Assembly (NCBI RefSeq): GCF_963506605.1
Contig: NC_083288.1
Span: 38,068,001-38,132,000 of the forward strand
DNA length: 64,000 nucleotides
Source: Zootoca vivipara
Lineage: Eukaryota
Direction of reading: 5' to 3'
The notes under the pieces were generated by a model that was given only the letters and a program-made list of their open reading frames with translations, did no database searches and was not told the DNA's origin. Below are positions 6,162 through 24,707 of the stretch, one piece after another (within the stretch, counting starts at the first letter, position 1; the number at the start of each line of letters is the position of its first letter). The translations under genes and the position numbers were made by a program.

Positions 6162-8003
6162 TTAGATTTGCCCCCACTTGTCTCTGGGGTTAGGATAGCA
6201 CAGGCCAGCTGCACAACATAGCATGGCACAGAGGCAGAGAAGGAAAGCACTGGTCATCAGGAGCCGCTGGCTGCAGAGGGCACGATCCGCCTGAGAGTGA
6301 AAGGAGTGCAACAATGAATGCTCCTCCCCTTATAATCCAACTTGCATCCTGAAGAAACCCAGAATCCCCAGGTCCAGATACTGTCACTGCCCACATTCAT
6401 CTTACCTGATCCAGCATGCTGGACAGGGCAGGATTAGCCTGGTAATGTGGCTGGTAACAAATTCCTGTCTCTTCTTGATGCATGTCCCATTCCTCTATCA
6501 CACATTTAGGTGGCTGTCTGGGGACAAGATGGGTGTATTGCATTAATGGGTTAAGAACTCCTTGAAACTAAATCTCTTGGCTCACCTGGTCTTGGGGAGA
6601 AGGGATGAAGGTGCAGTGATGCTAAGGCAGTTCTCATGGGAGACTGAGTTCGTGATGATAGTCAGGAAGTGGATTGATTCCTGGGCATCTGGACCTGTGG
6701 TCGGAGTTGATGGGAGGAAAGGTCAAGGGGAGATGGACACGGAACTAGAGTTCCAGAAATCTTTGGGAGGATGTTGCAATTGGTCACGAGTGAGAAATCA
6801 CTCACCTTTCAGACCCAGTTTTTCCCCAGTGACTGTCAGACCTAGGCGTGTACCATTGGGAGGATCTGTGCCGTTGTGGAGGTCAAAGGTCAAGCCAACC
6901 ATGACAGAGACTGCTGTAGGGGTCTCAGCAGTGGTTGTGGAGGGAGTTGGTGTCAAGGCACTTTCCTGCGTCTTATTTGGGATACAGAACATTAAGTGTG
7001 CCAGAGACTTTAGCAGAGAATTCCAGTCCTTAGAGATGAGGGAGGGAAAAGGAATGAGAATTGACTCTTAGTTGATTCTATTCTCTTAATTGCAATTTTT
7101 TACATTTCCTTCTGCCTTTAAAGTACCTTTCTAATTTCACCCAGTCTTGCCACTAAAAATTCCCTTTTGCTCTTAACAGCTAGAAAATTGAAAGATGGCA
7201 ACTTTATTTAAAAAGTACCATAAAACCTCTCAGAACACCTGGATATTTGAATATTTCAGATATAGCTGCACCTACTAATTTAAAATTTTGCATTGTTGAA
7301 GATCCTTTTCTTTTGCTCCCCACTTCTTCTGATAGTAACCATTTGGGACTGTCTTTTCAAGGGCAGTTTCTTATAGCGTATTTGTAAAAGCCAACAACAC
7401 CCAACCCTTCTGTAATTCCTGAATGTTTAGCTTGGGTCATTAAGGTAGGATAACAGCAGCCAACACAGGCAACACTATTTTTGAGAGCAAATCAATGCAG
7501 CTGTTCAAATTCAGGTAAATCTCTCAAGTCTATTAGAAAATGGAAATAAATAAAAACAATTGCCAAAAGATAAATCACACAAGTCTGCCTCTGCAATGAA
7601 CACCCGACATACCCAAGTCAGCCAAGAATTGTTAGGGAAATTCTTTGCATTCCATCTGAGAAGATACCCAACCATCCTGAAAGTTCAGTTGCCGAGCCTA
7701 AACAGTTAGTAAGAGACCAAGGAGAAGGTAGAGCACCCACCACTGCCTCCTAAAGTCTCTCATGCGTCCTTTACAACCACAACCCAATTCCATCCCCAGC
7801 ATTTTGGTCTGATTTTCTACTTAAGGTGATCATCTCTAGCTCACCTCTTTGACATCAGGATTCTGAACATCATGTGACTGGATGTAGGCAGCAAAACCAA
7901 CAAAGGCAACAGCCAACGAAAGGAGGCAAAAGAAGAAGGTGACCAGAGGTGGGTGTCGCTCCAGGCAGACACGCAGGGAGCCCAGCAGGGAGCAGATGAC
8001 CAT
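6162..8003 (-). CDS. TMEM219: Transmembrane protein 219 (IGFBP-3 receptor; TMEM219/TMEM248 family), 243 aa
   Basis: Coding exons 8003-7845, 7028-6806, 6694-6586, 6517-6406 and 6290-6162, all GT-AG with consistent phases (732 nt). Translation MVICSLLGSLRVCLERHPPLVTFFFCLLSLAVAF...NPDVKEDWNSLLKSL...GEKLGLKG...QPPKC...DRALCSQRLLMTSAFLLCLCAMLCC...YPNPRDKWGQI matches the TMEM219 pattern (HPPLV TM1, DW, GLKG, QPP, C-terminal TM). AATAAA at 5951-5946. Neighbours fit 16p11.2 synteny. Confidence 0.9.
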
Positions 8004-10694
8004 GGTCAACCCTAAGAATGAGGGTAAGAAGGTGTCATCCCAGCACTAGAAGAACCTGAAACTTCTGCTGGAACAGCCAGAATCAAAGGGAAACGAAAAG
8101 GCTGGCAATGTGCTACCTATTACCCTTTGCACTTTGTGTGGTATAACCATAAGCTTTACTTTATTAAATAAATTTTAAAAAGTCAAATCGTGTCCCAGAA
8201 ATGTGAATGGAAATAACACCAAAATATATTCATTCAATCTCATAATTGCTCAGTGATTATTTAAATATTTAGCGTGCATGCGGTCTGGTTGTCTAAAGGG
8301 ACTAAACTTGCTGAAAAGAAAGTGGGAATTGGTGTGCCTAAGATTGCCCCTGCCTCAAGATCGCCATGTAAATGGAAAGATGATGTACTGCAACTTCGTA
8401 TTCATTTTTTATGTGCTTTCCAAAAATACCTGAAGACATTTTGTTTCAACAAACATTTCCATTTGGATGAAAAGCTCTCCATCTTGTATTGCTTTTAAAA
8501 GTATGTTATTGTAATTCAGATTGAGACATGTGAAAGGCAATTCAAAAATTAATAAAATGAATATATTCAGACTGTGGGGTGTTTTTAGACAAGTAACCAC
8601 TTGACGAAGTTAGCAGTCACTAGATTCTTGATCATCGCAACTGGCTGGATGACTCTGCTTGTATGAAAGAACGTCACATTCAAGGAGATACAGGTAAGGT
8701 TTTCCTACTTGACAGGTTTCCCTACTTCTCTATATTTCTGATGAAGGTGGCAAATTTCAACACAATTAAGTTGGAAAGAAAGAGCTGGAATTATAGGTGA
8801 AAGTTGGATATTTGCAACCCAGAGTTGCTTCATTTGCTCCACCCAACATGGGAATCTCATCATTGCCAAGTCTTCTCGCAGTGTGATGTTATTTGTTGGG
8901 GATGAGGAAGGGGGAAAACTTTATAAGGAGCTTATTTTTTAACAATCTCTGTCAAATCTTAAAGTATAATGTGCCACGTGATGTACTGTTGTTGATCACA
9001 TTGTTTTTCCTTTGTTTAAAGTTTTTTTTTTAAAAAAAGTATATGGGGGTGCTGATCTTCGTGTGTGCCCTCAAAATTCACCAAAAGAGAGAACCCCTCA
9101 CAAAATGAATAAGCAACATAAACTGTGGGAAACGGAAGACTACATTTGATTTCTTAAGTTTTGTTCCATTCCTTTGTTACATAAGGCTTCACTCCTTTTG
9201 AGTCTTCTGGTCTTGTGAGACAGTTTCTCCCCATATTTCTTAAGAATTGCATGTGAATGTGTAGTTTCATGGTAGACTTGTTTTGTGCTGTATATCCCAC
9301 AAATGTTGGTGTGTTTACATCACACAAGCAACTTGCTAGCAGTTACTGCAGCGAACTGCTAGCAAGATCATTGTGCAGCACGTGATCTCCTGGTCCCTTC
9401 GCTGCTGGGAATGTCAGTTGCAAGGAATTGTATGTGAGGACAGGGCTGTTGTGCTCAGACCCTGCTTGTAGACTTCCAATAGGCATTTTGGCTGACCACT
9501 ATGAGAACTGGATGGGCCATTGGCCTGATCTAGCAGACCCTTCAAACATTCCTAACAAACAGTTTAGCCCTTGGCTCTGCCCACGCGATCATCATGAGCT
9601 CTTTTTAAGTCCACTAATGGCTTCCTGCCACTGCAAGATGTGGTGATGGGCACAAGCATAGATGGAATAAACACACACTTTCATGGAGAATGAACGTGTT
9701 CTGCTATTAATCATGACAAATGGAACCTGCAACAAAAAGTTGTAGTATAGAGGCCCCTATTTGGAATTCCTGCCAGCCAGCCATGCCCTTTCCCTGCATA
9801 TTCCATTTTCCCTCCTCCCGCTTGTCCATTCCTCCCTCAATTCAACAGAGAGTCAATATTCTATAGCCATTGAGTATGTTTAGTTCTTCCTGAATAACTC
9901 TTCCATGTGCACTCATCATGCACTTTTAGCTACACAAGGATCCACACTTGGGAGAATGAATTTGCTATTAGTGTAAGGGAAGGCTACATACAACCTCCAA
10001 ACTTAAGAGGTAGCATGCCTGCTAATACTGTCACTAGGGAGTAATAACAGGTGACAGCTATTGCTTCTATGCCTGTTTATGAGCTTCCCAGAAGCATAGA
10101 GTTTACCACTGTGGGAAAGGGGATACTAAACTAGATGGACCTTTGGCCTGGTTCAGCAAAGCTGTTGTTATGATCTCCAACACTGAAAGTTCTGCTAATG
10201 CCATTTTGCCTGGTTATCCTCACAACCAACTTCTCCAACACCCTCCTAAGTGTCCCAACGTAACTGCTAAATACAGAACAATCGACTTACACACTTTCAA
10301 AAGTAGAGTGCTGGACAACTGAGGGACACTTGGTACTTTTTGATTTCCCACATCCCACTATGATCCACATAGCAGCCACCATGTCCTCAAAGAGCTAAGA
10401 CAATCTGTATGTTGCATCCTTCCCCCCACCCCACTGTTTCATATCCATCCCCCATCATCTTTCTTCTAAATTGCAGATTAAATAAAGAGGCAATGGTTTG
10501 AGGAGAGTTTAAGGCTGCCTAGAAGCCCTGGTCTTAGATATGTATTCCTTGATTGAGTGTTTGTGGTGGTGCTGGGGGGGAGGGATAGTTGTGGTTTTTC
10601 TGGATTGCTTCCTACATTACACAACACACCACACAGGCAAGTCCTCTGTAAGAAACAACACAGTAAGCACATAAAGATTATCATATGTGGCAAG

Positions 10695-11086
10695 TGTGGG
10701 TAAATGCCAGGATCTGTCCAGGTCTTCTTAGGCCCCTATGCCTGGGCAGGACGTCTGGAACACCTTCAGCATACACCCGGGAATCATGGACTCATAACTG
10801 GGCTTTATGAGCACCAAATCAGCAGTGAACAGCAGAAGCATTTGTAGAGGTTTCAAAACATTCCTCATTTATTTCTATTAACTACTGCATATTTACAGAT
10901 CTGGCTTTGTGAGTGTTACAGCCTCTCACTTAGCCATCTTGTCTACAGAAGATATTAAACTGCACACAGCACACAGCAGAGAGCAGAGTCAGGAATGAAA
11001 AACAACAAAGTAACAATTCCTAACTGTTCCCTCCCAACAGCAGATATCACCAGATTTTCAGAATGGGAGGGGTGAAAATGCTCACA
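10695..11086 (-). repeat. 3' LTR of the Copia element
   Basis: 392 bp, TG...CA ends, near-identical to 15437-15828. AATAAA on the minus strand at 10873-10868. Confidence 0.97.
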
Positions 11087-11120
11087 ACCTCCCCCTTTTC
11101 ATTCTGACCATTATGAAAAT

Positions 11121-14100
11121 CTAGCACAAAAGCAATTTCTTTACATATATACCAAGTTGTTCCTTATTAACAGCTTTAGTCAAAGCATCAGCAGGTATTT
11201 CTTTCCCTGGCATATATGAGACTTTTACAACTCCTTTCTGAATGCATTCTCTGGCACGGTGCAATTTGATTAGCAAATGTTTTGTTCTTTGCTTGCACCC
11301 TTCTGAATGGATTAGTTCTATGCAGGCTTTGTTGTCCTGATAAACTTGAACTGGACAACAAATTTTTACTCTCATATCCTCACATAGTTGCAACAACCAC
11401 TCTACATTCATGAGGGAAAAATTTAAAGCGTTGAGTTCTGCTTCACATGAACTCATGCTTATTGTTGCCTGTTTCTTACAAGACCAATCAAATAGGCACT
11501 GATTGTACAAATAACACACACCTGAGGTGCTCTTGCCATCAGTTGTATCACTACCAAAACTGGCATCGGCATAGATCTCAAGACCTCCAGATTTTTGGCT
11601 AGTAAGCTTCAACCTGTAATGCATAGTGCCTTTTAAATACCTAACTATGCGTTTCAGTGCCTTCCAGTCTTGCACTGTAGGTTGATTTACATATCTGCTG
11701 AGCAAATTTACGCTAACAGCAATGTCTGGTCTTGTGCACCTTGCTATAAAACTAAGTTTACCCAAAACACTTCTGAACAATGTAGTGTCAGGAAAAACAT
11801 TAGCATTAGTATCATGTTGGTACCCTGTGACCATGGGGGTGTCTACAGAATTGGCATCTGTCAGATTTAATTTTTCAATCACATCATTGATCTTACGTGA
11901 TTGATGCAGCAAAACATCACCTTGCTTATTTCTCTCTACTTCCAGTGAGAGATAATTGCTGACTTCCCCTAGGTCTTTCATATCAAAATGCTTTTGCAGT
12001 TTTGCAAGAGTGGTTTTGTAAATATTTGCATCCTTCCAGAAAAACAAAATATCATCCACAAAACAAATGCAGTACAATTTGTGCTGGTTAGATTCTTTAA
12101 CAAAAACACAAGAATCAGCCTTTCCTTGCTGGAAACCTAAGGAAAACAGCACTTCTGTCAGCTTAGTGTGCCAGCATCGAGCACTTTGTTTTAGACCATA
12201 CAGGGATTTTTTTAATTTACACACCATTCCCTTTTTTATCTGCACTCCGTCTGGCGGTGACATGTAAATACTCTCATTGAGAATTCCGTACAAAAACGCA
12301 GTATTTACGTCGTGATGAGATATGGTCATGCCCTCTTCTGCAGCAATTTTCATCAACAGCCTAACTGTCTCAAATTTGACTGTCGGTGAATATGTCTCAT
12401 GATAGTCCTGATCAGGAACTTGAGAAAAACCACGTGCAACTAATCTGGCTTTATATCTGACCACTTTACCAGTCTGATCAGTCTTGGTTTTGTAAATCCA
12501 CCTGCTGTCTACAAGTTTCATGCCTGGTTCTACTGGAACCAATTCCCACGTGTCATTTTGCTTTAGGGAATTCAATTCAGCTTTCATGGCATTAAGCCAA
12601 GGTTCGGCATCTTTTTCAGGTAAATTTTGAACCTCTTTGTAGTTAGTTGGTTCAAAAACTGAGTTTGGATTGCTAGTGGCAGCCATATCTGAAATAGCAG
12701 CTTTAGCAAATTCTTTAGAAAATCGTTTAGGTGCTTGTCCCTTGGTAGTTCTCTCAGATCTACGCAATACTCTGGGATCCTCTGGGTCTGGTTCCTCCTC
12801 CTTGGGAGAATGGTGACCTGTATCTGGCAAAGATTCTACCTCTAGATCAGTGTCAGACCCATCTGATTTCTTAAAAGAGGTCTTTTCATTCTGATCATCT
12901 GTATCAGTGTCAGAATCTGTGCTACCATCAGCATCAATTACAGGTTTTGCCTCTTTGTTAATTGGTTTCACCACCTCATCATCTGAAATGGGATGACATT
13001 GAAAAATGCCAACTTTGTCCCATTTTGGATTACAATCCATGCTTCTGGTCAGCCTAATTGTGTTTGTGTCTGTCATCAGCACACGATAAGAACCTTTTTC
13101 ATAACCTAGAAAAATGCCATGTTGACCAGATTTGCTCAGTTTGTCACCTTGCAGAGTGTGCACCCAAACTTCAGAACCGAAAATTTTTAAATGTTTTACA
13201 AACGGTTTCCTTTTGAACAGCATTTCGTATGGGGTGCAATCAATGGCTGATTGATACCTGCGGTTGTAAATATAGGTGAAACACGATAGAGCTTCAGCCC
13301 AGAAGGGGTTGGGTAGGCCTGAATCATGCAACAGAGTTTTAATTCCTTGTTGCAAGGTCTGGTTTACTCTTTCACATAAACCATTCTGCCATGGAGATCT
13401 GGGCGTGGCAGTCATGTGCTCTATGCTCTGTTCTGCAGTAAAGTTTTCAAACTGTTCTGAACAAAATTCTCCACCCCTGTCAGTGAAGAGACAACGTACA
13501 TGCTCATCGTGAACATTCCTGAGCCATGCACAAAATTTTTGAAACTTAGAGAAGGCTTCAGACTTCTTTTGTAACATATAGACCCAAACATATCTAGAAT
13601 AGGCATCTATCAGAACCAAAAAATAACATGAGTTTCCTCTAGAGAGCGCTAGAGGTCCAACCAAGTCTGCATGCACAATCTCATAAGGTTTCTTAACCTC
13701 CCTCCCAGATTTTGTACCTTTGGGAGCTTGCTTAATTTTGTTCTCTGCACATGAGACACATTTCATATGATAAGGACACTTTTGAACTTTCATGCCCTCA
13801 ACCATATTTTGCATTTTACCTACTGCCTGGAAATGCAAATGACCAAACAAACGATGATAATCATGAATACAATGGTTATGCAATTTCTCATTCTTATCTA
13901 CTGATATATTACAGCACGCCTTTTCAGTTTCTTTAGTTGCTCCAGCAGCTGTACCTGTAACAAAAGGCAATACATATAAACCATCAACACACTTAGCATA
14001 AAGAATGAGTTTGTTGTCTCGAAGAATTTCACACCGAGAGTTTGCAAACACCACTTTAAATCCTTGAGCGTCTAGCTGAGAAACACTCAAGAGATTATCC

Positions 14101-15125
14101 TGCAAATGAGGAGCATACATAACATTTTTAACTGTTGCATTAAGGCTCTGCAAAGAAACCGTTCCCTGAGCCAAACTTTTAATAGTCGTTCCATCCGCTT
14201 GATGAATTGCTCCTCCCTGTTTCTCAAGATGAAGAAAGAGATTTTTATCATTGGCCACGTGCCTTGTGGCTCCTGAGTCGACAACAAAAACAGAACGTGT
14301 GAGTTGATTAGAACTGCGTGAAATCAAAGCCTTTGATGCAGCTGGCCCTTGGGGTTTTCGGCCTCCTCCCCCTTTGCCTTTGAAGTTGCCCTTCTTCTTT
14401 GAAGAGTTTTTACACTGATTTTTAAAATGGCCGACCTCTCCGCAAGAAAAACAGCGGCGCATTTTAAGAGCTTTTGCAACACTTTCACTTTCCCCTGTTG
14501 AAGGCTTGTAGGCATTTCCAACAGCCTTGTCCCTGCTTTCTCTAGCAGTCTGTCTGCGATCCCACTCATTCAAGAGCACGCTAGACACATAATCTTCTGT
14601 TAGACGGTCATTGGGCAAAGACGACAATTGAGCAGCTACAGCATCATAAGATTCATCCAAACTGTTTATGATAAGCATTGCAAAAACAGCTTCTGAAATA
14701 TTTAAGTCTCGCTGGACAAGATCCTGTCTGAGACGTTTTAATTGGGCTAGATGGCTGGGCAAATCACCATCTTTCTGCAATTCCAGCCTACACAGCTTTT
14801 TAAAGAAAAGCACACTGGATCCTGCATTTTGTCTTAGATGCATATCTCGAAGTTTATTCCAAACAGCCCGTGCAGTCTGCTGGTTCTCCAAGTTGACCAA
14901 CAACTGGTCCTGGACACTCAGAATAATTGTCCCCCTGGCTCTCATGTCTGCCTCATGCCACGCTGGCCATCCATCATCATCCTCATTAGGGGGGTCATCT
15001 TCTATAATATGGTAAAGCTTTTCCCTTTGTAAAAGTGCTTTCATTTTGACCTGCCATGTAGGATAGGTCTCTGGTGTAAGGAGAGGAAAAGATAGAGACA
15101 TCTGGCCAGAATGTGCAGAAGCCAT
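11121..15125 (-). CDS. Copia Gag-Pol polyprotein (gag, CCHC knuckle, protease, integrase, RT, RNase H), 1334 aa
   Basis: CFSCGEVGHFKNQC zinc knuckle; VVDSGAT protease; HRLFGH...CVSC; integrase HADLVGP / FTDRGGEF / QNGLCER; RT YKARLVARGFSQ and FVDD; RNase H YADASF / CEAEL / YQDN / ADALTK. No stops or frameshifts. Confidence 0.97.
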   Translation of the reverse strand: MASAHSGQMSLSFPLLTPETYPTWQVKMKALLQREKLYHIIEDDPPNEDDDGWPAWHEADMRARGTIILSVQDQLLVNLENQQTARAVWNKLRDMHLRQNAGSSVLFFKKLCRLELQKDGDLPSHLAQLKRLRQDLVQRDLNISEAVFAMLIINSLDESYDAVAAQLSSLPNDRLTEDYVSSVLLNEWDRRQTARESRDKAVGNAYKPSTGESESVAKALKMRRCFSCGEVGHFKNQCKNSSKKKGNFKGKGGGGRKPQGPAASKALISRSSNQLTRSVFVVDSGATRHVANDKNLFLHLEKQGGAIHQADGTTIKSLAQGTVSLQSLNATVKNVMYAPHLQDNLLSVSQLDAQGFKVVFANSRCEILRDNKLILYAKCVDGLYVLPFVTGTAAGATKETEKACCNISVDKNEKLHNHCIHDYHRLFGHLHFQAVGKMQNMVEGMKVQKCPYHMKCVSCAENKIKQAPKGTKSGREVKKPYEIVHADLVGPLALSRGNSCYFLVLIDAYSRYVWVYMLQKKSEAFSKFQKFCAWLRNVHDEHVRCLFTDRGGEFCSEQFENFTAEQSIEHMTATPRSPWQNGLCERVNQTLQQGIKTLLHDSGLPNPFWAEALSCFTYIYNRRYQSAIDCTPYEMLFKRKPFVKHLKIFGSEVWVHTLQGDKLSKSGQHGIFLGYEKGSYRVLMTDTNTIRLTRSMDCNPKWDKVGIFQCHPISDDEVVKPINKEAKPVIDADGSTDSDTDTDDQNEKTSFKKSDGSDTDLEVESLPDTGHHSPKEEEPDPEDPRVLRRSERTTKGQAPKRFSKEFAKAAISDMAATSNPNSVFEPTNYKEVQNLPEKDAEPWLNAMKAELNSLKQNDTWELVPVEPGMKLVDSRWIYKTKTDQTGKVVRYKARLVARGFSQVPDQDYHETYSPTVKFETVRLLMKIAAEEGMTISHHDVNTAFLYGILNESIYMSPPDGVQIKKGMVCKLKKSLYGLKQSARCWHTKLTEVLFSLGFQQGKADSCVFVKESNQHKLYCICFVDDILFFWKDANIYKTTLAKLQKHFDMKDLGEVSNYLSLEVERNKQGDVLLHQSRKINDVIEKLNLTDANSVDTPMVTGYQHDTNANVFPDTTLFRSVLGKLSFIARCTRPDIAVSVNLLSRYVNQPTVQDWKALKRIVRYLKGTMHYRLKLTSQKSGGLEIYADASFGSDTTDGKSTSGVCYLYNQCLFDWSCKKQATISMSSCEAELNALNFSLMNVEWLLQLCEDMRVKICCPVQVYQDNKACIELIHSEGCKQRTKHLLIKLHRARECIQKGVVKVSYMPGKEIPADALTKAVNKEQLGIYVKKLLLC

Positions 15126-15436
15126 GCCTGTGTTTAGTTAACAGCAAGACACTTCCCTTCATGCACCCCAAATACTCTTGACTCTCTCAGCAACTTCTCT
15201 CCCCACTCAGCACAATTAACAGGCAAACTGGAAAAGCGTCTCTGCTGTCTTCCTGGCAGCCAGCAACATACCTTTTCTGTAAATCAAACAGCAGCTTGAA
15301 AAACAGCTTCAGCTCACAGCTCAACTCCGATGTGCAGCATCAGATGGAAATGGATCAGAAACATCCAATTATCCAACCATCAATAGCCATCTGCAACCAT
15401 CAGCCTGCTACCAGCAACCATCCGCCTGCTACCATA

Positions 15437-15828
15437 TGTGGGTAAATGCCAGGATCTGTCCAGGTCTTCTTAGGCCCCTATGCCTGGGCAGGACGTCTGG
15501 AACACCTTCAGCATACACCCGGGAATCATGGACTCATAACTGGGCTTTATGAGCACCAAATCAGCAGTGAACAGCAGAAGCATTTGTAGAGGTTTCAAAA
15601 CATTCCTCATTTATTTCTATTAACTACTGCATATTTACAGATCTGGCTTTGTGAGTGTTACAGCCTCTCACTTAGCCATCTTGTCTACAGAAGATATTAA
15701 ACTGCACACAGCAGAGAGCAGAGAGCAGAGTCAGGAATGAAAAACAACAAAGTAACAATTCCTAACTGTTCCCTCCCAACAGCAGATATCACCAGATTTT
15801 CAGAATGGGAGGGGTGAAAATGCTCACA
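15437..15828 (-). repeat. 5' LTR of the Copia element
   Basis: 392 bp. By eye it differs from the other LTR at only 2 positions, within a CACAG/CAGAG repeat. Confidence 0.97.
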
Positions 15829-17599
15829 GCAAGTACACTCTTGGTGGTCTTCAAAGCCTGTTTATGCAGCAACAATTCTACACATTTGATTGTTGCCCAC
15901 CATTTTCTAATGTGGGTTGTACATTTCCAGCACTTGTAACAGGGGAAGTGGCCTTCAGTGGTGAGGGAGAGGATTGTCTCCAGTGGTAGCTGTACTCAGA
16001 ACAGACCCAATGAACTGAATGGACAATCTTAGGTTCAATAAGTTCAGGTCTCCTTTAGAGTAGAACTTAGCTGGATACAACCCAGAGACTCTCTTGAGCA
16101 ACCTCTGTGCTCTAGTGCTAAGCTTAGGTGAGTTCTGCTACAAATTCAATCCTGGCGACACTAAGAAAGACTGCTGCCTACAGAAGCAAAGGAAATGCAA
16201 CAAATCCGCTTTTTACTTTGAAGTGGAGGAACATGCTACAGTTTTTGTTTAAAGACATTTTGTTAAAATGATCCCACTAACTGTTCAATGTTGTAGTTGT
16301 GGCAAATGGTACGTAATAGTCAAAAGCTGCTTTCCGCACATTCTGTGTGTCTGCACAATATTGCATTGTGAAAGAAAGGATCTGCAGAACATGTTTGCAA
16401 CCAAAGTACACTGGTTACTGCTTTGCACTATCGCTTCAGAAGTCTCCCCTTGAAGACCATCCCTAGCAATTAGCAAGCAGGGCATTAAGCACAATGACCA
16501 TCATCATGAATGCATTTATTCTGTGTTTGGCTTCCCTCTCAATTGAAAAAATATACTTTCCTAGAAAAATCTTATACAGTATATGGAAGGACAAGTGTTT
16601 TTGTTGTTTCCTCAGTGATTTACAGTATTTATTTTTAAGAGCAGGAGCGAACCATGAGTACGGGTGCTTCCTCTCTCTTCTCATGTGCCCCAATAGGAGA
16701 GGAAGATTCCCAGTTTCTTAAATCAGCTTCACTTGACATCTGAACTGAGATACAGTGGTTTCAATGTTACTGACATTTCTGGTTTGCAAGCCAAGATAAA
16801 ACCATATCTGCCCAGATATGGAAAGTGGGAGTTATCAGATGCATTCAGTCAGTCATATCTTATTAGTAATATCTTATTAGACTTATTAGGCTGAAAAAAT
16901 GCACAAGCCCCTTCACTTTCCCCTGAAAGCTGCAATTAAACCAGTTAAGCCTAACCATAGGTTTTGGCCAAACCTAAGGTTATAATACATCCAGAATTTC
17001 CCAGACATACCGGAATACTGCAGTCAGAAGCCGGACATATGGCAATCCATGTCAGCAGTGTTGATTTCCCTTAAAAATAGCCAATTTTGCCAAAAAAAGC
17101 TCAACAACTTTAGTGTTTTCACTTTTTGAAAAATGGCAACCCTACCAAAGCAGGAAATTATGATTAGAAGATTCCTGGTTTTAGTGAGTACAAAAGTCTT
17201 GTTCGTATCTTAGCTTAATAAGACTGTCTAAACTGTTTCATTATGTGGATCCATGGTTACTGGTTCATATAAATCTCATGTCAGCCTTGAAATCCATGTG
17301 TCTCATCTTAAAAATTCCTGGGTGTCCAGGTATATAAATCCCCTTTAAGAAAAACTGTTCACTCTTCTATTTTACACCATCATTGGTTCAAGTCCCACCC
17401 TATGCTTTTACCATAGCAATTACCATCTATTAGAAAATATAGCAGCAGACCACTCAAAATCATAGCCTTTTTATTTGACATGTAGAAAGCTACCATATAG
17501 TAGGCTTCAGCAATACAGGGTCTGCATACTACAACCAGGTCATACACACCCGTGAAATTACATGGACAAATGAGCCTGTTTTGTCCCCCCCCCCCATTT

Positions 17600-18955
17600 T
17601 TACACAGGGTTCTTTTCAAAATAGGAGCAATAAGCAGCCCTGATCTGGCAAGCTCTCTTGGTCAGTCCAGCCTCCGACAAGGGCACCCTTGGCCTGGCTG
17701 AAGCATTCTGGCTTTCAGCCACTGTGGGGCTTTCCAACGGCTCCAGCAACTCATCCCCTTTGATCTCGCAGATATTGTGCAGGATACAGCAAGTGGCTAT
17801 GACCACAGGAATAAGCTTCTCCCTCACATCCAGCCTCATCTGCAGGCACCTCCAGCGAGCTCTCAGGACCCCGAAAGCTCTCTCCACGCATGCTCGGCAC
17901 TTGGCAAGCCTCTCGTTGAATTTTTCCTGGGCCCCGGTTTTTGGCGCTGGGTACGGCTTCATGAGCCAGGGGCGAAGCGGATAGGCAGGATCCCCAATTA
18001 TGATAGGGGTCATCAAAACGCCTTCCAGCACCGTTGGAGTCTGTGGCCCAAAAGTGCCTTCATCCATGCTGTTGAAGAACGGAGAGTTGTGCAAGATGCG
18101 GGAGTCGTGGGACCTCTCCGGAAAGCCGACATAGATATCGGTGAACCGGGATTTGCTATCCACCAGGGCCTGCAGCACCATAGAATAGAAACCCTTGCAA
18201 TTAATGTAGGAGTCAGCAGAGAACGGGGGGCAGAGGATGGAGATGTGGATTGCATCGATTGCGCCGAGGCAATTGGGGAAACCCATCTCCTTGAAGCCCT
18301 CAATGATCTCCTGCGGGTCTCCCAGCTTAATGATTTGGGCCAGCAGCCTGCTGTTTATTTCCTCGCACACCTCTTCAAATATCGAGCAGGCTGACGAAAT
18401 CCCCACCCCGAAGAGCTCCGAGACGGTCTTGTAGCTGTCGTGGTGCGCCAGCTTCCAGATAGTCATGGCGACTCTCTTCTCCACGGGGATGTGAGACCGC
18501 ATGCCCGTGTCCCGGCGCTGCAGGGCGGGGCGCAGCTCCTCGGCGATGTACATCAGCGTGGACCGCGACATCCTGAACAAGGAAATCCAGCACTTGTCGT
18601 CCTGCTCGGAGCTGATCATCCGCTCCCACCATTCGCTGCACCTGGGAAGCATCCAGTGGGAGCGCTCAGACAAGGCCATCAGCTCGTGCTCGTAGTGCAG
18701 CGCGGGAGAAGACGAGTACACCATGGTGACCACGGAGACGATGGCGTTCCGGTGAAGCCGCAGCAGGGCTCTCTTGCGGCGGACGCTGGCCGAGAGGATG
18801 CGCCTCAGCACCGCGGCTGACCTGCGGAAGCGCCTCCTCTGCAGAATCCTCGCTATGGCGAATATCACCGTGCGCCTGTTGAGCATCCATTGCTGCACTA
18901 GCAACTGGGAGGTTTGGACGCAGGCAGCAACCAGAGCCACGCACTCCTGCTCCAT
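17600..18955 (-). CDS. PIF/Harbinger transposase-derived nuclease (HARBI1/ALP1-like, DDE_Tnp_4 family), 451 aa, single coding exon
   Basis: Family motifs FRMSR, PVEKRVA, LFGVGISS (HTH), GAID(234)AIH, SMVLQALVD, HDSRI, GD(322)PAYPL, FNERL, VE(358)RAFGVLRARWRCL, CCILHNICE. Candidate acceptors open exons at 19015 or 19129. AATAAA at 17475-17470. Confidence 0.92.
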   Translation of the reverse strand: MEQECVALVAACVQTSQLLVQQWMLNRRTVIFAIARILQRRRFRRSAAVLRRILSASVRRKRALLRLHRNAIVSVVTMVYSSSPALHYEHELMALSERSHWMLPRCSEWWERMISSEQDDKCWISLFRMSRSTLMYIAEELRPALQRRDTGMRSHIPVEKRVAMTIWKLAHHDSYKTVSELFGVGISSACSIFEEVCEEINSRLLAQIIKLGDPQEIIEGFKEMGFPNCLGAIDAIHISILCPPFSADSYINCKGFYSMVLQALVDSKSRFTDIYVGFPERSHDSRILHNSPFFNSMDEGTFGPQTPTVLEGVLMTPIIIGDPAYPLRPWLMKPYPAPKTGAQEKFNERLAKCRACVERAFGVLRARWRCLQMRLDVREKLIPVVIATCCILHNICEIKGDELLEPLESPTVAESQNASARPRVPLSEAGLTKRACQIRAAYCSYFEKNPV

Positions 18956-20528
18956 TTATCCAGCCACTCTTGAATGAAGCTTGCAGAAGGCTCAGGAGGA
19001 AGTGGCGTGAAGGTGCTACGAGGAAAAACCTTCCCCTTGCTACACCCTTAGCCAAGGCAGGGATGATGTCGCCGGGCAGGAACGAGACATCACCAGTCCT
19101 TGTGCTTCAGCCGGAAAGGTGCTGTTGAGCTGGAGGGCAATATATTGTAACTGAATCATATTTGCATTTCAACCGTGAAGGCCTTTTTTTAAACAGCAAA
19201 ACAGACTGAGCATAAGAAAATTATTCCACCACACTTGGGAAAGGTCCAATCTCTGCCCATTCTACATTTCAAAATTCTTAAAGGTTTCAGAGTTGCCTAT
19301 GGCTCGGTTCTGTCTTCCCCATCCCAGCTTCCCTCCAGCACCTATAAACAGTCTTCCAGCTGACCACCCCTCAATCACACTGCTATATTACTCCCATAGT
19401 GTTCGTCTTACATCAACCCACACCCACCTCCAGTAACTGCCTGCTCTCTGAAGCTAGGACTTTATCTCAAAACTGGTCAACCACCTGATATCTGATTTGT
19501 AACGTAATTGGCTTCAGAGGTTCAGCATCCCTGCTTGTTTCAGGTGTGATCAGCCCAACAGGAGTTACTCAGCAGTGATGGGAAAGCGCTCTATGCATGC
19601 TCAGAGGCAATTAGGTTGAGTCTTGAAAATCAGGTTCTGAGGTAAATCCTGTGAGATTTAAAATCGTGCCACTTTTCCAGAGCTCCACCTCTGCTCAAGT
19701 TAGTGAGACAGCTATACTTTATTTCCCCCCAAAATTCCATTTGAACCATGACTACAGCAAAATGAACAGTTTTAAATCCTCTTTTCTGTGAAACGAGCAG
19801 AATGCTAATGTGTTCTCAATGGTTAAAGCTCAGGGAATCAGAGCAGTTCTGTTGGCCTACTGACCCAAATAATTCAGTTCGGTTGCTCTTCCACCATCCC
19901 TAGCAAAACACCCAGAAGTCATTTAATGCCCAGCTTTGACTTGCTACAAAAACAAGGAAGAACATTGGGAACTGATCTACATGTTCTCTGCTACAATAAC
20001 TCCCCCACTCCCCCTTCCACACAGAATATTGATTTTTCTCATGCAACACAGTTTTCTGTGTGTCCTCAGTACATTAGGGCTGCAACCCTGCGCATCCTTG
20101 TTTGGAAGCAAATCACACTGAACTCAGTGGTACTTACTTTTAAATAATAACATGGTTAGGGCCCTTCATTTAATCTGATCATCATCTCATACTCAGTTGC
20201 CAAAGACAATGAAGAGAAGAGAGAACAGTGACTGGGCATAGGGAAGAGGCGAAGGGTGGCCAAGATAGTGGCATGGAAAAACAGATAGTCTGGAGACAGA
20301 AAGTGGTTTGGTTTAAACTCTAACGAAGGATCTACTGGGAAGTTCCTTATCCATCCCATCTGTCCCTATTTTCCAGGCGTGGCCCTGCCTTTGGGGATTT
20401 GTTACCAAAATCATGTTAGCAATCACATACTAGAGCTCTCATTCTCCAGCATTCATCTCTCTCTCACACACACGCTAGAAGTTGAATCTATCTATAAGTG
20501 TGCTTCACTTCAAGTGCACCTACGTGTG

Positions 20529-20664
20529 CAGGCACCCCCAAACTCGGCCCTCCAGATGTTTTGGGACTACAATTCCCACCATCCCTGACCACTGGTCCTG
20601 TTAGCTAGGGAAGATGGGAGTTGTAGTCCCAAAACGGCTGGAGGGCCGAGTTTCGGGGTGCCTC
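20529..20664. mobile_element. Palindromic hAT MITE copy
   Basis: Same family as 4700-4837. TSD TACGTGTG/CACGTGTG (1 mismatch). Confidence 0.8.
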
Positions 20665-22503
20665 CACGTGTGATTGCACAGACACTAATGTGCAATGGGA
20701 GCACACAGCCTGCTCAGATTACAACTGTAGAGGCGTCTTTTGTCCTACTAATAACAATACCTCATATTCCTAGACTGCTTTCAAGTGCTCACAGTAGTTC
20801 ACATGCACCATCCAGTTGCAAGCCTGTAAGTCGGTATTATCCCCCAATACAGCAACAGGGCTGAGGTTGAGGGAGAATTGCTTCCCCAAAGCACCTTGTG
20901 AGCTCAGGGCAGAGGTAAGATCCAAACCAGTCCTGACTTCTGACTCATAGCTCAGTCTCTCAGGCACTACGCTACACCAGCTTTCTCTTAATAAATTACT
21001 GAGGGAACAACTGTAATTTTAAAAGCAACAACTATGGGTGGAATTCCGGCTAGCGCTAAGAAGATTGTTCTGTCTGCTGCTTGCTTGATGGAACAATTTC
21101 CCCTCTCCTCCCTGTGCACTGTTCTGGGGGTTCTCATGACCCTTCAGAGCAGATTTGGGAGAGGCGTAAGGTGGGTGAAGCCCCATTAGGCTAGTAGGAG
21201 TCTTTGTGCTGGCTTCTGCTAGTGAAATCCTGCCATATCTTTACGAATACTGCCTGCTCAGCTACTGAGTCTGTGGAGGGAAGGCCAAAAGGCAGCATGC
21301 CATGTGCAAACCAGAGCCCCCTCGCCAGATGAGAACTAGTCAGCAAGGCTTACTGTTATTTCATGGTTCAGTGGTAGCATTCAAAATAGGTTCCCGGCAG
21401 GTTAAGCTCCCAGCTCAAAATAAGCTTTTGGGTTAGAGAGAAAGATGAGTAAGCACATGTGAAGATGGTTAGTACAGCAGTGTGTTATTTGTTTAATACA
21501 CAATATCCCACCTTTCCTCCAAGGAGCTCAAAGAGGCATACATAGTTGTCACTGCACTTTATCTTTACAACAACCCTGTGGGTGAGGTTACGCTGAAAGA
21601 TAGTGACTGACCACCATGTGAGCTTCCTAGTTGAATGGGGATTTGGATCTTGGTCTCCCCGGTCCTAGTCAGGCACATCAGCCGCAGCACCACAGGAAAT
21701 TAGGTTAGGAGATCCAGGTACAAACTTTCTCAATTGCAAAAGTCCATCAAGCATGGTGAGAAACAATGATCTGGCTGACTGAATTCCATAGTGACAAGAA
21801 GAAGAGCACTGAAAACCAGGATTGCTTGCTAAGAAGTGCTTCAGGAATAATTAATGATAATGGGGAAATGCAGTATTTCACATGGATGGTAGACATATCC
21901 CTTCTTTTTCAGCTGTGCACTGAGAAAAAAAATTGCATTCACTTGTAAATAGTCTAATCTCCAGAAATATGCGAGTGTATTAATCTCTCTCAACATATGC
22001 ACACAAGGTTGCAATTCTATGCATACTTACTAAGAAATAAGCTCCACTGTGGGACTCACTTCTGGGCATATATATATGCAAAGGATTGTGGTGTGTATAG
22101 GATAGAAAATTGTGATTTTCCCTGACTGAGAGGTGCCATCGTTCAGAGGCAAAGTCAATATTTTGCATTCAGAAAATGCAAGTTCAACCTCTGGCCATGC
22201 AGCTAAAAGCGTTCAGCTTGAGAAAGACCCTGGAGAGCAGCTGCCAGTCCAGAGTAAACAATACGAGATGGACCAATGGGCTGACTCGGTGTGAGGCAGT
22301 AAATGAGGGCAAAAAACCCCCGTTTTACCCCCCCCCCCAAGGGCTACATTCTTCGAAACCCAAATCCTTGAGTATTTTGTTCCAAAAACCAACCTAATAG
22401 CTGAACAAAAAGATTTAGGTGGGAGTAACCAGATGGAGAACAGACCCAGGGGGGAGAAATGCAAGAATGGTACACAGTTAAGAAAGGTGCAACCTTATCT
22501 TAC

Positions 22504-22930
22504 CTCCGTCCTGTTCTCTACTTCCCTCCAGGTTGGCGCTCAGGCGACTTCCCCTTTTACTCGAGGATTCTGTCCCTTTAAGAGGCAGCTGTGCACACCC
22601 ATTTCCTAACTCCTGCAAAAGAATCCTATAGGTATTACTCTCGCGCGCAGGCGCAGGCGAGACTCCTCCGCGTCACTCTCAATCCTCGGGCGAATGGGCG
22701 CTTTGGTGTGACGTGCAGGCGCGCGCGCGCTCCGCGCTGCCCTCCCGCCATAGAAACAGTGCCGCTCCCTATACTGGTAGTACTGTAAATCACGTCATCG
22801 ACTTAGGCCTCGGAAGGGAGGAAGCCGCGCGCCTTCCCGTATAACGGCTGCTCGTGACCATAGAGGAGAGTCTTCCGAAGAGCATAGAGCTACCACAACT
22901 ACTGGATGCTTTGAGAGCCATTTTGGTCGA
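22504..22930 (-). promoter_or_regulatory. CpG-island promoter and non-coding first exon, inferred for TMEM219 and/or the Harbinger-derived gene
   Basis: CpG cluster with NRF1-like GCGCAGGCGC, CRE-like TGACGT/ACGTCA and YY1-like GCCATTTT. Strong minus-strand donor GAG|GTAAGA at 22504/22503. No other CpG island lies between here and the TMEM219 ATG exon (acceptor at 8011). Confidence 0.65.
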
Positions 22931-24707
22931 GGGCAAAGAGTACTTATTTATAGATAATTAATATATTGTATCGTCAAAAACAGTTTTAGCTACATTTAGG
23001 TCAACTTATGAAATATTCACCTTTTAAAGGAGGCAAACCAACAAAGAGCGCATTTTCTCCTCCCCCTCCCCCAGTGCAGGTCAGGAACAGTAAGTTATAT
23101 GGCTCATTTTTTGTTACGAGTCTACTTGTGTTTTTTAAGCCCAGAAAAGAGTAACTGCAAACCAACCCAGGCTCAGATTATATTAAAGGAGGCTCAGATT
23201 CAAATAAGCAAGCAATTCAGACCATGCAATGTTTACTTGGACCTATCCCATTGATTTTAATACTATTTCGGTGGGGGCGGGGGCGGAGATCGGGCTCATA
23301 GCTTTCTGTATATTTCTACGAAGTAGCTGGGCTAAGAAAATGTTTTGCCCCTATGAAGGCGATCAACATTGCACTCTTACCCAACAGGACACAGATGGCT
23401 CCTTCCTTTGGCTTTCGTGATAAATTGTGGTGGGGATTTATTTCACACACTTCCTCATTACCACTGCAACTAAGCATCTTTACTGAGAAGCCCCATTGTG
23501 CTCTGTAGGCTTTAAAAAGGTAAAGAACCCCTGACAGTTCAGTTCAGTCACGAACGACTCTGGAGTTGCAGTGCTCATCTCGCTTTACAGGCTGTATGCT
23601 TTACTCACTGTATGCTTTAATCTTCAGTAGATGTGCTTATGACATACCCCTTACCCAAAGACGCAGTCTCAGGAATCTGCTGCTGTTGTGGTAACTGATT
23701 GGCCGCATCAGTTCATTAGTTTTTAAGATGGCAATCTTGTTTTTAAAAGGGGGGGGGGCGGCTTTTTTACAGTGACAACCAGCTTAGAAGCTCAGCAAAT
23801 GAGAATAAAAATAAGAGTATCAAACCATTAATTACCATTTAGGTAAACCAGCACTGTACCTCTAAAAGATGTCTAGAAGTAAAGTTATGCTTAGCATAAT
23901 CTCATCACTATGCTGGCACTGAGCAAGTATTTTATTTCTATTAAATCAAGTTGATCAAGTCACATAATTTCAGTAGAAATCACCGCTGCCTTCTTTAAGA
24001 CATCTTCTGAAAACTGTTTAAACACGCCTTCACATTTTTTTTCTTTGTGACCAACCAGTATTTATTGATGTTTTTAATTATGCCTTTAGTGGTTTTATCT
24101 TGTATGTTGCATACCACCTTGTCAATACTTACAAGAATGCAGCTTATAAATTCTTCAGTGGATAAACAAATAAAACTCTATTAGCCATTTATTAATAGTT
24201 CTTTGTGGTAAACCTCCCAAAGCTTTGTGCTTTCAAAAATTCATTCATGTTTTCCATCGCTACCCCTTAAAAATAATTTCCCTCCCAAACCATTTTCAGT
24301 GCCTTGAGCCACATCACTACCTACCCCATGCTGGTAACACACCTGTGTAGCGATGAATAATGAGACACTGACAAGGCGAGAGAAGTGAATTTAAATAAAT
24401 TCTTTTTTTGCCTTTATTTTCAGGGGAATCCAGAGAAATTAAAAACCATGTGAAGAAATTAAAAACCAGAGCATTAAATCAGAGAGAAAGAGAGAGAGCA
24501 AGAGAGAAAAAGAGAGGTGAGGCGTTAGCCCCACCGAGACAATTTGAGCTATAACAGCAAAGGGAGGGAGGTAGGCAGGTGGCAGAGCTTCCCCTTTCAA
24601 GATGCTTGGGCTTCTCCAGTCTTCAAGGGGGGTGGGGTGGGCATCTTGCCTCTCCCCATGTGCCCCCCCTCATGTCTTAGCGGTGCTTCCCCTGGGAATT
24701 ATTGAAG

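What the first reader, a model, noticed from the sequence alone, without database searches (positions are those of the whole stretch)
17470..19129. Candidate independently domesticated Harbinger transposase gene nested in TMEM219
Seen: an intact 451-aa PIF/Harbinger transposase ORF with the D234/D322/E358 triad retained but altered neighbouring motifs (IDAIH for IDGTH, NCK for NRK, GFPE for GWPG) and an Arg-rich N-terminal extension (NLS-like). It has splice acceptors just upstream (19015, 19129) and AATAAA ~125 nt after the stop. I could find no TIRs, no TWA TSD and no Myb/SANT ORF in the flanks. Established: autonomous Harbingers carry TIRs plus a second Myb-like gene; HARBI1-NAIF1 (vertebrates) and ALP1, HDP1-HDP2 (plants) are domesticated versions acting with Myb partners, in plants in chromatin complexes; true HARBI1 is shorter and lies in a different syntenic block. 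Inference: a squamate-lineage host gene derived from a separate Harbinger family, whose Myb partner would be encoded elsewhere.
Basis: partly seen in the sequence, partly recalled or inferred. Interest (0 to 1): 0.85.

Follow-up and report, generated by a model that had tools for sequence, protein, structure and literature searches.

The report
Lizard gene tamed from Harbinger transposon
A jumping-gene enzyme (Harbinger transposase) was captured as an ordinary host gene before lizards and snakes diversified, has stayed 94-98% identical since, and here is transcribed from the promoter exon of the gene TMEM219; what it does is unknown.

Summary
An intact 451-aa PIF/Harbinger (DDE_Tnp_4) ORF lies at 17600-18955 (-), with D234/D322/E358 and the altered motifs as described. 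There are no TIRs, no second ORF and no other copy in the window.

It is a host gene, not a transposon copy. Orthologues of exactly 451 aa, 94-98% identical and without indels, occur in geckos, snakes, lacertids, iguanians, a cordylid and an amphisbaenian. Many are annotated as 'IGFBP-3 receptor (TMEM219) isoform X1'. The next relative is only 52% identical.

An assembled transcript contig joins an exon at 22504-22616, inside a CpG island, to the predicted acceptor at 19129 (GT..AG). Stranded RNA reads lie on the ORF. TMEM219's own coding exons start at 8011, so the ORF is an alternative terminal exon in TMEM219's 5' intron.

Its closest relative is a young multi-copy Harbinger family in the leopard gecko. 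Two other squamate Harbinger-derived gene clades are further away and have lost catalytic residues. This supports a separate domestication.

Novick et al. (2011) reported five such ORFs (442-466 aa) in Anolis, probably including this one, so it is a new, better-described member of a known kind. Function, Myb partner and dN/dS are untested. The scan holds notes on this same stretch only (s1-853068, s1-853122), none on other DNA.

The parts
22504..22616 (-). Non-coding 5' exon in the CpG-island promoter region (22251-23000). Its donor is GGAG|GTAAGA at 22504|22503. The 5' end is not mapped; 22616 is only the end of the contig piece.
   Evidence: 113-nt contig piece 22504-22616; stranded reads in X19, X20 and X21; joint 19129|22504. 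CpG o/e 0.78-1.05; donor sequence.
19130..22503 (-). Intron removed in the transcript of the Harbinger-derived gene (3374 nt, GT..AG on the minus strand).
   Evidence: table 5: skips 3374, ends CT..AC on the + strand, in a 1551-nt contig of run X1.
17470..19129 (-). Single terminal exon of the Harbinger-derived gene. It holds a 174-nt 5'UTR with one short upstream ORF, the 451-codon ORF, and a 3'UTR of about 125 nt ending at the AATAAA.
   Evidence: contig covers 19129..17609; stranded raw reads fall to almost nothing below 17500..
17600..18955 (-). ORF of 451 aa plus stop: domesticated PIF/Harbinger transposase.
18713..18949 (-). Residues 3-81: one long predicted helix. It has 15 Arg and no acidic residue between E4 and E89. 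Residues 50-113 are invariant in 15 squamates. It cannot be aligned to turtle Harbinger proteins.
18332..18634 (-). Residues 108-208: helical DNA-binding-type region (HTH_Tnp_4-like).
   Evidence: E=0.0012, below the Pfam cut-off; helices, pLDDT 82-97.
17756..18271 (-). Residues 229-400: RNase-H-like DDE catalytic domain with D234, D322 and E358 invariant in the orthologues.
17470..17475 (-). Polyadenylation signal AATAAA.
   Evidence: Read depth drops from 1.22 (17500-17699) to 0.16 (17300-17499) in X19.
7845..8011 (-). First coding exon of TMEM219 as predicted from the sequence (acceptor TTCTTAG|G, ATG at 8003-8001, donor GAG|GTGAGC). It lies downstream of the Harbinger exon on the same strand.
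   Evidence: PF14940, profile positions 1-44, E=6.6e-13. Its splicing to exon 22504-22616 was not observed here.
6801..7067 (-). Open stretch containing the next TMEM219 coding exon.
   Evidence: PF14940, profile positions 42-130, E=1.8e-9.

Best explanation
This is a single-copy host gene derived from a PIF/Harbinger transposase. It was fixed before the crown squamates diversified and has been under very strong purifying selection since. It sits as one intronless coding exon inside the 5' intron of TMEM219, on the same strand. Shown: transcription runs from a non-coding exon in the CpG island at about 22.5 kb, which is spliced to the acceptor at 19129, and the transcript ends at the AATAAA at 17475. 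Inferred: the same first exon can instead be spliced to TMEM219's coding exons from 8011 on, so one promoter would yield two unrelated proteins by choice of terminal exon. The protein has an Arg-rich, acid-free N-terminal helix, a helix-turn-helix region, and an RNase-H-like domain with an intact DDE triad. Inferred mechanism: a nuclear DNA-binding protein that still coordinates metal and probably still nicks or cleaves DNA, as is proposed for HARBI1. It would be recruited through its invariant N-terminal helix by a Myb/SANT-type partner encoded elsewhere. It no longer moves any element. The confidence of 0.85 is for 'domesticated, expressed host gene'; the inferred mechanism alone would rate about 0.4.
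For: Orthology and constraint. The 90%-identity cluster has 44 members; the 15 listed are all 451 aa and come from Gekkota, Serpentes, Lacertidae, Iguania, Cordylidae and Amphisbaenia. Fifteen aligned orthologues are 94-98% identical, have no indel, and mean column identity is 97%; D234, D322 and E358 are invariant. No protein between 52% and 94% identity was found among 5.8 billion clusters. Within the species, 6 synonymous and 2 non-synonymous differences were seen, and both non-synonymous alternatives restore the squamate consensus residue.

Not a transposon. No TIRs, no second ORF nearby, one copy in the window.

Expression. A 1551-nt contig joins 22504 to 19129 with GT..AG. Stranded raw reads in X19 and X21 lie on the ORF with the orientation expected for a minus-strand RNA. 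In X20 the 5' exon is expressed but no reads fall on the ORF.

Location. TMEM219 Pfam hits lie on downstream exons, and KCTD-type BTB_2, NUFIP2-like and kinesin ORFs are neighbours. Eight species' annotations call the 451-aa protein 'IGFBP-3 receptor isoform X1', which implies exons shared with TMEM219.

Origin. The gene is sister to a multi-copy, near-identical leopard-gecko Harbinger family that keeps the canonical DGTH/NRK/GFPG motifs (support 100/99). The AU test rejects grouping it with the two other squamate Harbinger-derived clades to the exclusion of that family (p=0.0014).

Fold. AF2 mean pLDDT is 82, and the DDE domain is mostly above 90. Only DDE transposases and integrases appear among the weak PDB matches. 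The Myb-like protein of Harbingers binds the N-terminal end of the transposase (Sinzelle 2008, as cited in PMC9392472).
Against: Orthologous position rests on annotation names. Tuatara, turtle, crocodilian and bird genomes could not be searched at DNA level, so 'squamate-specific' means only 'absent from annotated proteomes'. Several residues that are near-invariant in the family are replaced in every orthologue, for example G280E (Gly in 51 of 51 other sequences), R363V, T171H, P239S and R253C. Catalysis may therefore be altered or lost despite the triad. No partner was identified. Raw reads are few (only 6% of each run was sampled), and none lie on 18500-18900. Splicing of the shared exon to TMEM219 coding exons was not observed here. 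The AU group was defined after the tree had been seen.
Confidence: 0.85

Rival explanations
1. It is a domesticated gene, but a catalytically dead scaffold or adaptor, as with Arabidopsis ALP1/ALP2 in PRC2. The transposase fold would serve only for protein or chromatin binding, and the DDE residues would be kept for structural or metal-binding reasons.
For: Lineage-fixed replacements occur at otherwise near-invariant positions around the active-site motifs: G280E, R253C, G235A/T236I, R363V. Two sister squamate clades have lost E358, or D322 and E358, yet remain conserved, so non-catalytic use of this fold is common in this group.
Against: All three catalytic residues are invariant in 15 orthologues spanning the deepest squamate split, whereas the paralogous clades lost them. 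The gene is also markedly more conserved (94-98%) than those clades (80-93%).
Confidence: 0.35
2. The conservation reflects an RNA-level or regulatory role: the exon would act as a decoy terminal exon and polyadenylation site that tunes TMEM219 output. The ORF would then be incidental.
For: Shared 5' exon and alternative terminal-exon architecture. In X20 the 5' exon is expressed without any ORF reads. A CpG island overlaps the 5' half of the ORF.
Against: A 451-codon frame kept with no indel or stop in 15 lineages, 97% amino-acid column identity, and mostly synonymous polymorphism (6 of 8 differences) are signatures of protein-level constraint.
Confidence: 0.03
3. It is a transposon copy (autonomous or recently dead) whose ORF happens still to be open.
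For: An intact DDE ORF with an HTH region. A 52%-identical family is currently multi-copy in a gecko.
Against: No TIRs, no Myb ORF and a single copy. Orthologues of identical length occur in all major squamate lineages. The transcript is spliced from a host exon.
Confidence: 0.01

Closest known systems
HARBI1 (jawed-vertebrate domesticated Harbinger transposase; Kapitonov & Jurka 2004; Sinzelle et al. 2008)
   Same: Single-copy, TIR-less host gene with a DDE_Tnp_4 domain and a retained catalytic triad. It is presumed to be a nuclease that works with a Myb-like partner (NAIF1), which binds the transposase N-terminus and imports it (PMC9392472).
   Different: HARBI1 occurs in all jawed vertebrates. 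This gene was found only in squamates. From my own knowledge, HARBI1 is about 350 aa and lies in another syntenic block. This protein is 451 aa with a specific Arg-rich N-terminal helix. Its nearest relatives are reptile Harbingers. HARBI1 itself was not available for a direct comparison.
The five Harbinger-derived ORFs of Anolis carolinensis (Novick et al. 2011, PMC3014272)
   Same: ORFs of 442-466 aa, without TIRs or TSDs, 53-68% divergent from one another, and interpreted as domestications. The 451-aa size and the 53-57% divergence from the 442-aa Anolis protein P0004 and from the ALP1-like clade fit. This gene is very probably one of the five.
   Different: In the text I could read, that paper gives no locus, orthology, expression, phylogeny or catalytic-residue analysis, and no supplement was held.
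Squamate 'ALP1-like' clade (P0003, P0005, P0006, P0009, P0010, ...) and the 442-aa Anolis clade (P0004, P0002, P0034)
   Same: Squamate-only, conserved Harbinger-derived proteins that share a common stem with this gene.
   Different: They are 43-47% identical to this protein and less conserved (80-93% and 68-80%). They have lost E358 (to G), or D322 and E358. They are separated from this gene by an active gecko TE lineage.
Eublepharis macularius multi-copy Harbinger family (P0016, P0135-P0142)
   Same: Closest relative at 52% identity. It shares GFP.., PYPAP.T.AQE and the C-terminal RP.[IV]P.SEA.LT.RA..IRAA tail.
   Different: It has many near-identical loci on many chromosomes. It keeps the canonical DGTH, NRK and GFPG motifs, so it is a transposon, not an orthologue.
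ALP1/ALP2 and HDP1 (Arabidopsis domesticated Harbinger transposases)
   Same: Harbinger transposase fold recruited to host chromatin complexes, with Myb-like partners for HDP1-HDP2 (PMC4671723, PMC7282668 and PMC5339849, listed).
   Different: These are independent events in plants. From my own knowledge, ALP1 lacks an intact catalytic triad, whereas this protein keeps it.
Domesticated Harbinger at the squamate harbiTRIM locus (preprint PMC12262214)
   Same: A squamate-wide, roughly 200-Myr-old, transcribed Harbinger-derived gene.
   Different: That one is linked to a PRY-SPRY/TRIM cluster. This window carries TMEM219, KCTD-type BTB, NUFIP2-like and kinesin ORFs, and none of the ten ORFs tested had a SPRY domain. 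It is probably a different member; this was not resolved.

Membership tests
PIF/Harbinger transposase superfamily (protein) | DDE_Tnp_4 / Plant_tran catalytic domain above the Pfam threshold | tested here: met
   PF13359 at 102.2 bits (cut-off 24.8); PF04827 at 60.6 bits.
PIF/Harbinger transposase superfamily (protein) | DDE catalytic triad at the conserved positions | tested here: met
   D234, D322 and E358 align with D (53 of 53), D (49 of 53) and E (44 of 53) of relatives. All three are invariant in the orthologues.
PIF/Harbinger transposase superfamily (protein) | N-terminal helix-turn-helix DNA-binding domain | tested here: inconclusive
   HTH_Tnp_4 at 18.9 bits, below the 27-bit cut-off. 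The AF2 model shows a confident helical bundle at 108-208.
Autonomous Harbinger transposon (element) | Terminal inverted repeats flanking the ORF | tested here: not met
   The best flanking pair is 18 nt at 83% (17351/19756), which is chance level.
Autonomous Harbinger transposon (element) | Second, Myb/SANT-like ORF inside the element | tested here: not met
   No other ORF of 75 aa or more lies in 15.9-24.5 kb outside the transposase ORF itself. A Myb gene split by introns would have been missed.
Autonomous Harbinger transposon (element) | TWA target-site duplication | not tested
   No element termini could be defined, so no TSD could be sought.
Autonomous Harbinger transposon (element) | Multiple dispersed copies | tested here: inconclusive
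   One copy in the 64-kb window, and each species' protein was seen on one contig. A whole-genome copy count was not possible.
Domesticated transposase host gene | Intact orthologues in distantly related species | tested here: met
   451 aa in 15 squamates including Gekkota, at 94-98% identity.
Domesticated transposase host gene | Orthologous (syntenic) position | tested here: inconclusive
   Only indirect: eight species' annotations name it an isoform of the IGFBP-3 receptor, which is TMEM219. The DNA context of orthologues could not be fetched.
Domesticated transposase host gene | Purifying selection (dN/dS well below 1) | tested here: inconclusive
   Protein-level conservation is extreme, and polymorphism is 6 synonymous to 2 non-synonymous, pN/pS about 0.1. 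No orthologous CDS was available for dN/dS.
Domesticated transposase host gene | Transcription as a host mRNA | tested here: met
   Spliced contig 22504|19129 with GT..AG, and stranded reads on the ORF.
HARBI1 orthologue | Present throughout jawed vertebrates, about 350 aa, own conserved locus | tested here: not met
   Relatives above 52% identity occur only in squamates. The protein is 451 aa and lies in the TMEM219/KCTD13 block. HARBI1's sequence was not compared directly.
ALP1-type inactive Harbinger derivative | Loss of catalytic residues | tested here: not met
   The triad is intact and invariant, unlike the two sister squamate clades.

The most novel reading that the evidence does not exclude
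The protein is still an active, site-directed DNA nuclease or recombinase that squamates have kept almost unchanged since their deepest split. It would be produced by mutually exclusive terminal-exon choice from the promoter of TMEM219 (the IGFBP-3 receptor), so that one regulatory unit switches between a membrane receptor and a DNA-cutting enzyme. That would be a new vertebrate case of a transposase retained for its catalytic activity, outside RAG and PGBD5.
Probability: 0.12. Interest if true: 0.8.

Novelty: new member of a known kind. Interest (0 to 1): 0.5.

Why it matters
The literature I found treats HARBI1 as the only characterised Harbinger-transposase-derived gene in vertebrates (PMC9392472), and its function is still unknown. 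This squamate gene is a second, independent and even more tightly conserved case that keeps the catalytic triad. Two sister squamate clades that lost the triad sit beside it as natural controls. A living transposon relative in a gecko preserves the ancestral motif states. That combination makes it possible to ask what a host wants from a Harbinger transposase. The shared-promoter, alternative-terminal-exon arrangement with TMEM219 is also a clean example of how an intronic insertion gains expression. It explains why annotation pipelines label a transposase as 'IGFBP-3 receptor isoform X1', a name that could mislead users.

Tried and rejected
No orthologous DNA could be fetched, so there is no direct synteny check and no dN/dS.
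- True HARBI1 could not be retrieved. It is absent from the 120 listed hits, and no tool returns it by name. It is therefore not in the tree.
- The PDB sequence search found nothing meaningful.
- Foldseek against the PDB gave only weak matches, E of 2e-3 or worse, to DDE transposases and integrases.
- An ESM Atlas search with the N-terminal 100 residues gave only unnamed short helical proteins and no lead.
- The supplement of Novick et al. was not held, so I could not prove that this is one of their five ORFs.
- Papers containing both 'Harbinger' and 'TMEM219' are 16p11.2 disease papers by title, and I did not open them; I assume 'harbinger' is the ordinary word there.
- The inverted-repeat pair 17351/19756 (18 nt, 83%) was considered as TIRs and rejected as chance.
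- Complex prediction was not used, because no candidate partner sequence was in hand.
Full report

Yes. The minus strand carries an ATG-initiated ORF at 17600-18955, 451 codons plus stop. A stop codon lies immediately upstream of the ATG, so the protein cannot be extended into an upstream exon.

Pfam assigns residues 233-394 to DDE_Tnp_4 (E=2.8e-29) and to Plant_tran (E=2.1e-16). There is a sub-threshold HTH_Tnp_4 match at 157-204.

In a 65-sequence family alignment the corresponding consensus motifs are IDGTH, NRK and GWPG.

AATAAA lies at 17475-17470. No convincing terminal inverted repeats flank the ORF; the best pair is 18 nt at 83%. No other ORF of 75 aa or more lies between 15.9 and 24.5 kb. 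tblastn finds no second copy in the 64-kb window.

**2. Where it sits**

Two stop-free pieces downstream on the same strand match Pfam TMEM219 (PF14940). Piece 8045-7839 covers profile positions 1-44 (E=6.6e-13) and piece 7067-6801 covers positions 42-130 (E=1.8e-9). From the sequence, the first coding exon of TMEM219 is predicted at 8011-7845, with its ATG at 8003.

Upstream neighbours are a NUFIP2-like ORF, KCTD-type BTB_2 ORFs and a kinesin motor ORF. From my own knowledge, this fits the vertebrate block syntenic to human 16p11.2.

CpG islands lie at 22251-23000 and over the 5' half of the Harbinger ORF. The Harbinger exon therefore lies in the 5' intron of TMEM219.

**3. Is it expressed, and how?**

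Reads and contigs of four runs of the window's species were laid on 17300-23299.

- In run X1, a 1551-nt contig covers 19129 down to 17609. Its first 30 letters lie at 22504 and upward. The skipped 3374 nt have CT..AC ends on the plus strand, which is GT..AG on the minus strand.
The one at 19015 was not seen.
- A separate contig piece covers 22504-22616.
- In three stranded raw RNA-seq runs, all reads on 22500-22699 and on the ORF have the first mate on the plus strand, as expected for a minus-strand RNA.
- X19 and X21 cover the ORF at depth 1-17. X20 covers the 5' exon at depth 3.8 but has no ORF read. This suggests the 5' exon is also used by another isoform, presumably TMEM219.
- Caveats: only about 6% of each run was read. 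No raw read fell on 18500-18900, the most GC-rich part. The join of the 5' exon to TMEM219's coding exon lay outside the 6-kb stretch and was not observed.

**4. Is it a host gene?**

The protein search returned one 90%-identity cluster at 94% identity. The next hit fell to 49-52% identity. The cluster has 44 members. The 15 listed are all 451 aa and come from these species:

- Snakes: Ophiophagus, Notechis, Vipera, Crotalus, Candoia.
- Lacertids: Podarcis, Lacerta.
- Iguanians: Anolis sagrei, Pogona.
- A cordylid: Hemicordylus.
- An amphisbaenian: Rhineura.
- Geckos: Gekko, Eublepharis, Heteronotia.

Aligned, the 15 proteins are 94-98% identical to the window's protein, with no indel and 97% mean column identity. 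The catalytic triad is invariant, and so is a block spanning residues 50-113. The window is closest to Podarcis and Lacerta (98%), so it comes from a lacertid.

From my own knowledge, geckos split from other squamates roughly 200 Myr ago. An untouched 451-codon frame with about 5% amino-acid change over that span means strong purifying selection.

Eight species' annotations call this protein 'insulin-like growth factor-binding protein 3 receptor isoform X1', that is, an isoform of TMEM219. This is indirect evidence that the nesting and the shared 5' exon are conserved from geckos to snakes.

Polymorphism within the species points the same way. Of eight differences inside the ORF, six are synonymous. 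The two non-synonymous ones, S115N and L314S, restore the squamate consensus. That gives pN/pS of about 0.1, though the counts are small.

**5. Where did it come from?**

A maximum-likelihood tree (LG+C20+F+G4, 45 rows) gives these relationships:

- The TMEM219-nested clade has a long stem (0.30) and very short crown branches (0.004-0.03).
- Its sister, with support 100/99, is a leopard-gecko family (P0016, P0135-P0142). That family has many near-identical loci on many chromosomes, so it is a young or active transposon.
- The gecko family is 52% identical to this protein. It shares the protein's C-terminal tail and its GFP/PYPAP motifs, but keeps the canonical DGTH, NRK and GFPG states. Because it retains ancestral states that every orthologue has changed, it cannot be derived from the host gene.
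- Next out (99/97) is a clade containing the 442-aa Anolis carolinensis protein P0004, which has lost D322 and E358.
- Then (93/95) comes a squamate-wide 'ALP1-like' clade of about 483 aa. It is 80-93% conserved and has lost E358.
- Turtle multi-copy Harbingers, an alligator sequence and a kiwi KRAB fusion lie outside.

Forcing the three squamate gene clades together without the gecko transposon costs 42.6 log-likelihood units (AU p=0.0014). The group was named after the tree had been seen.

The TMEM219-nested gene is therefore a domestication of its own, drawn from a reptile Harbinger lineage. True HARBI1 could not be obtained for the tree. Independence from it rests on distribution: HARBI1 occurs in all jawed vertebrates (PMC9392472), whereas this gene was found only in squamates. 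It also rests on the nearest relatives being reptile transposons.

**6. What the protein looks like**

The AlphaFold2 model built on the family alignment has mean pLDDT 82 and pTM 0.72. It shows four parts:

- One long helix over residues 3-81.
- A helical bundle at 108-208, the HTH region.
- An alpha/beta RNase-H-like domain at 229-400, mostly above pLDDT 90.
- A C-terminal helix at 426-448, after a disordered linker.

Foldseek against the PDB gives only weak matches, all DDE transposases or integrases: ISCth4, Tn5, Mos1, TnsB and retroviral integrases. No solved structure matches by sequence.

The N-terminal helix has 15 Arg and no acidic residue between E4 and E89, with RRR and RRKR clusters. 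It cannot be aligned to turtle Harbinger proteins.

Lineage-fixed changes at positions that are at least 85% conserved elsewhere include N126L, T171H, R176K, A199E, P239S, G280E (Gly in 51 of 51 others), R363V and W407L.

**7. How it most likely works**

Shown:
- It is a spliced, polyadenylated host mRNA that starts in a CpG-island exon and ends in a single coding exon.
- The encoded protein is under strong constraint and has an intact DDE triad.

Inferred:
- The same first exon is alternatively spliced to TMEM219's coding exons. One promoter would then give two unrelated proteins through terminal-exon choice. The support is the annotation names, and the X20 run showing the 5' exon without ORF reads.
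- The protein is nuclear, binds DNA through its HTH region, and retains metal-dependent nicking or cleavage. This triad has been preserved while two sister domesticated clades lost theirs.
- The invariant Arg-rich N-terminal helix is the docking surface for a Myb/SANT partner. In Harbingers and in HARBI1-NAIF1 the Myb-like protein binds the transposase N-terminus and imports it (Sinzelle 2008).

The main rival is a non-catalytic scaffold role of the ALP1 type. The fixed changes next to the active site favour that reading.

**8. What is known already**

Novick et al. (2011, PMC3014272) reported five Harbinger-related ORFs of 442-466 aa in Anolis carolinensis. They lacked TIRs and TSDs, were 53-68% divergent from each other, and were interpreted as domestications of extinct Harbingers. 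The sizes fit: 442 aa matches P0004 and 451 aa matches this gene. The divergences fit too, so this gene is very probably one of the five.

A 2025 preprint (PMC12262214) describes another roughly 200-Myr-old, transcribed, apparently domesticated Harbinger next to a squamate TRIM cluster. None of the ten ORFs tested in this window had a SPRY domain, so that is probably a different member.

The MSANTD2 paper treats HARBI1 and NAIF1 as the previously identified Harbinger-derived vertebrate genes, and in the passages I searched it does not mention squamates. I found no paper linking a Harbinger gene to TMEM219.

First-stage notes on other windows of the same genome mention further Harbinger-derived genes and Myb/SANT genes. 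I did not test them and use them only as leads for partner searches.

**9. Verdict**

It is a new, now better-described member of a known kind, a domesticated Harbinger transposase. It is already annotated, under misleading names, and was foreshadowed in 2011.

Its extreme conservation, its intact triad and its promoter sharing with TMEM219 make it a good experimental entry point. Function and partner remain unknown.

Noticed in passing
window 10695-15828, minus strand (ORF 11121-15125): A 1334-aa uninterrupted gag-pol-like ORF lies inside the same TMEM219 intron. The stretches at each end translate identically (for example 15610-15473 and 10868-10731), as expected for very young LTRs. This agrees with the first-stage note on an intact Ty1/Copia element.
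   Followed up: partly
window 20514-20679: A palindromic repeat with 73-nt arms, 84% complementary, 20 nt apart. RNA-seq depth is very high on both strands (100-180x in raw reads, and thousands in contig depth), with many loose ends. It looks like a high-copy MITE- or SINE-like element expressed genome-wide.
   Followed up: no
Proteins P0003, P0005, P0006, P0009, P0010, P0012-P0014, P0146-P0158 (not in the window): A second squamate-wide Harbinger-derived gene, annotated 'ALP1-like'. It is about 483 aa and 80-93% identical from geckos to snakes. The third catalytic residue has changed (E to G in Thamnophis).
   Followed up: partly
Proteins P0004 (Anolis carolinensis, 442 aa), P0002, P0034, P0143: A third squamate Harbinger-derived clade that lacks D322 and E358. 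One member of the 90% cluster is an 1116-aa Elgaria protein, which may be a fusion.
   Followed up: no
Proteins P0016, P0135-P0142 (Eublepharis macularius): A 320-aa Harbinger transposase present as many near-identical loci on many chromosomes; one identical sequence was seen on 9 contigs. It is an apparently recent or active Harbinger family in the leopard gecko, and the closest relative of the domesticated gene.
   Followed up: partly
Protein P0050 (Apteryx mantelli, 639 aa): A Harbinger transposase domain combined with a KRAB domain (PF01352) in a kiwi protein. This may be a host-transposase fusion.
   Followed up: no
window 18000-19250: CpG o/e is 0.63-0.86 over the 5' UTR and the 5' half of the ORF, making a second CpG island 3.3 kb downstream of the promoter island. 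Raw RNA reads were absent from 18500-18900 although the assembled contig covers that stretch. Possible causes are an internal promoter, GC bias or sampling.
   Followed up: no
window 26681-27490 (-), 37438-39487 (-), 54952-55767 (-): Neighbouring ORFs match NUFIP2 (5e-27), BTB_2 of the KCTD type (1.5e-12) and a kinesin motor (6.5e-53). This places the window in the block syntenic to human 16p11.2, with an extra NUFIP2-like gene.
   Followed up: partly
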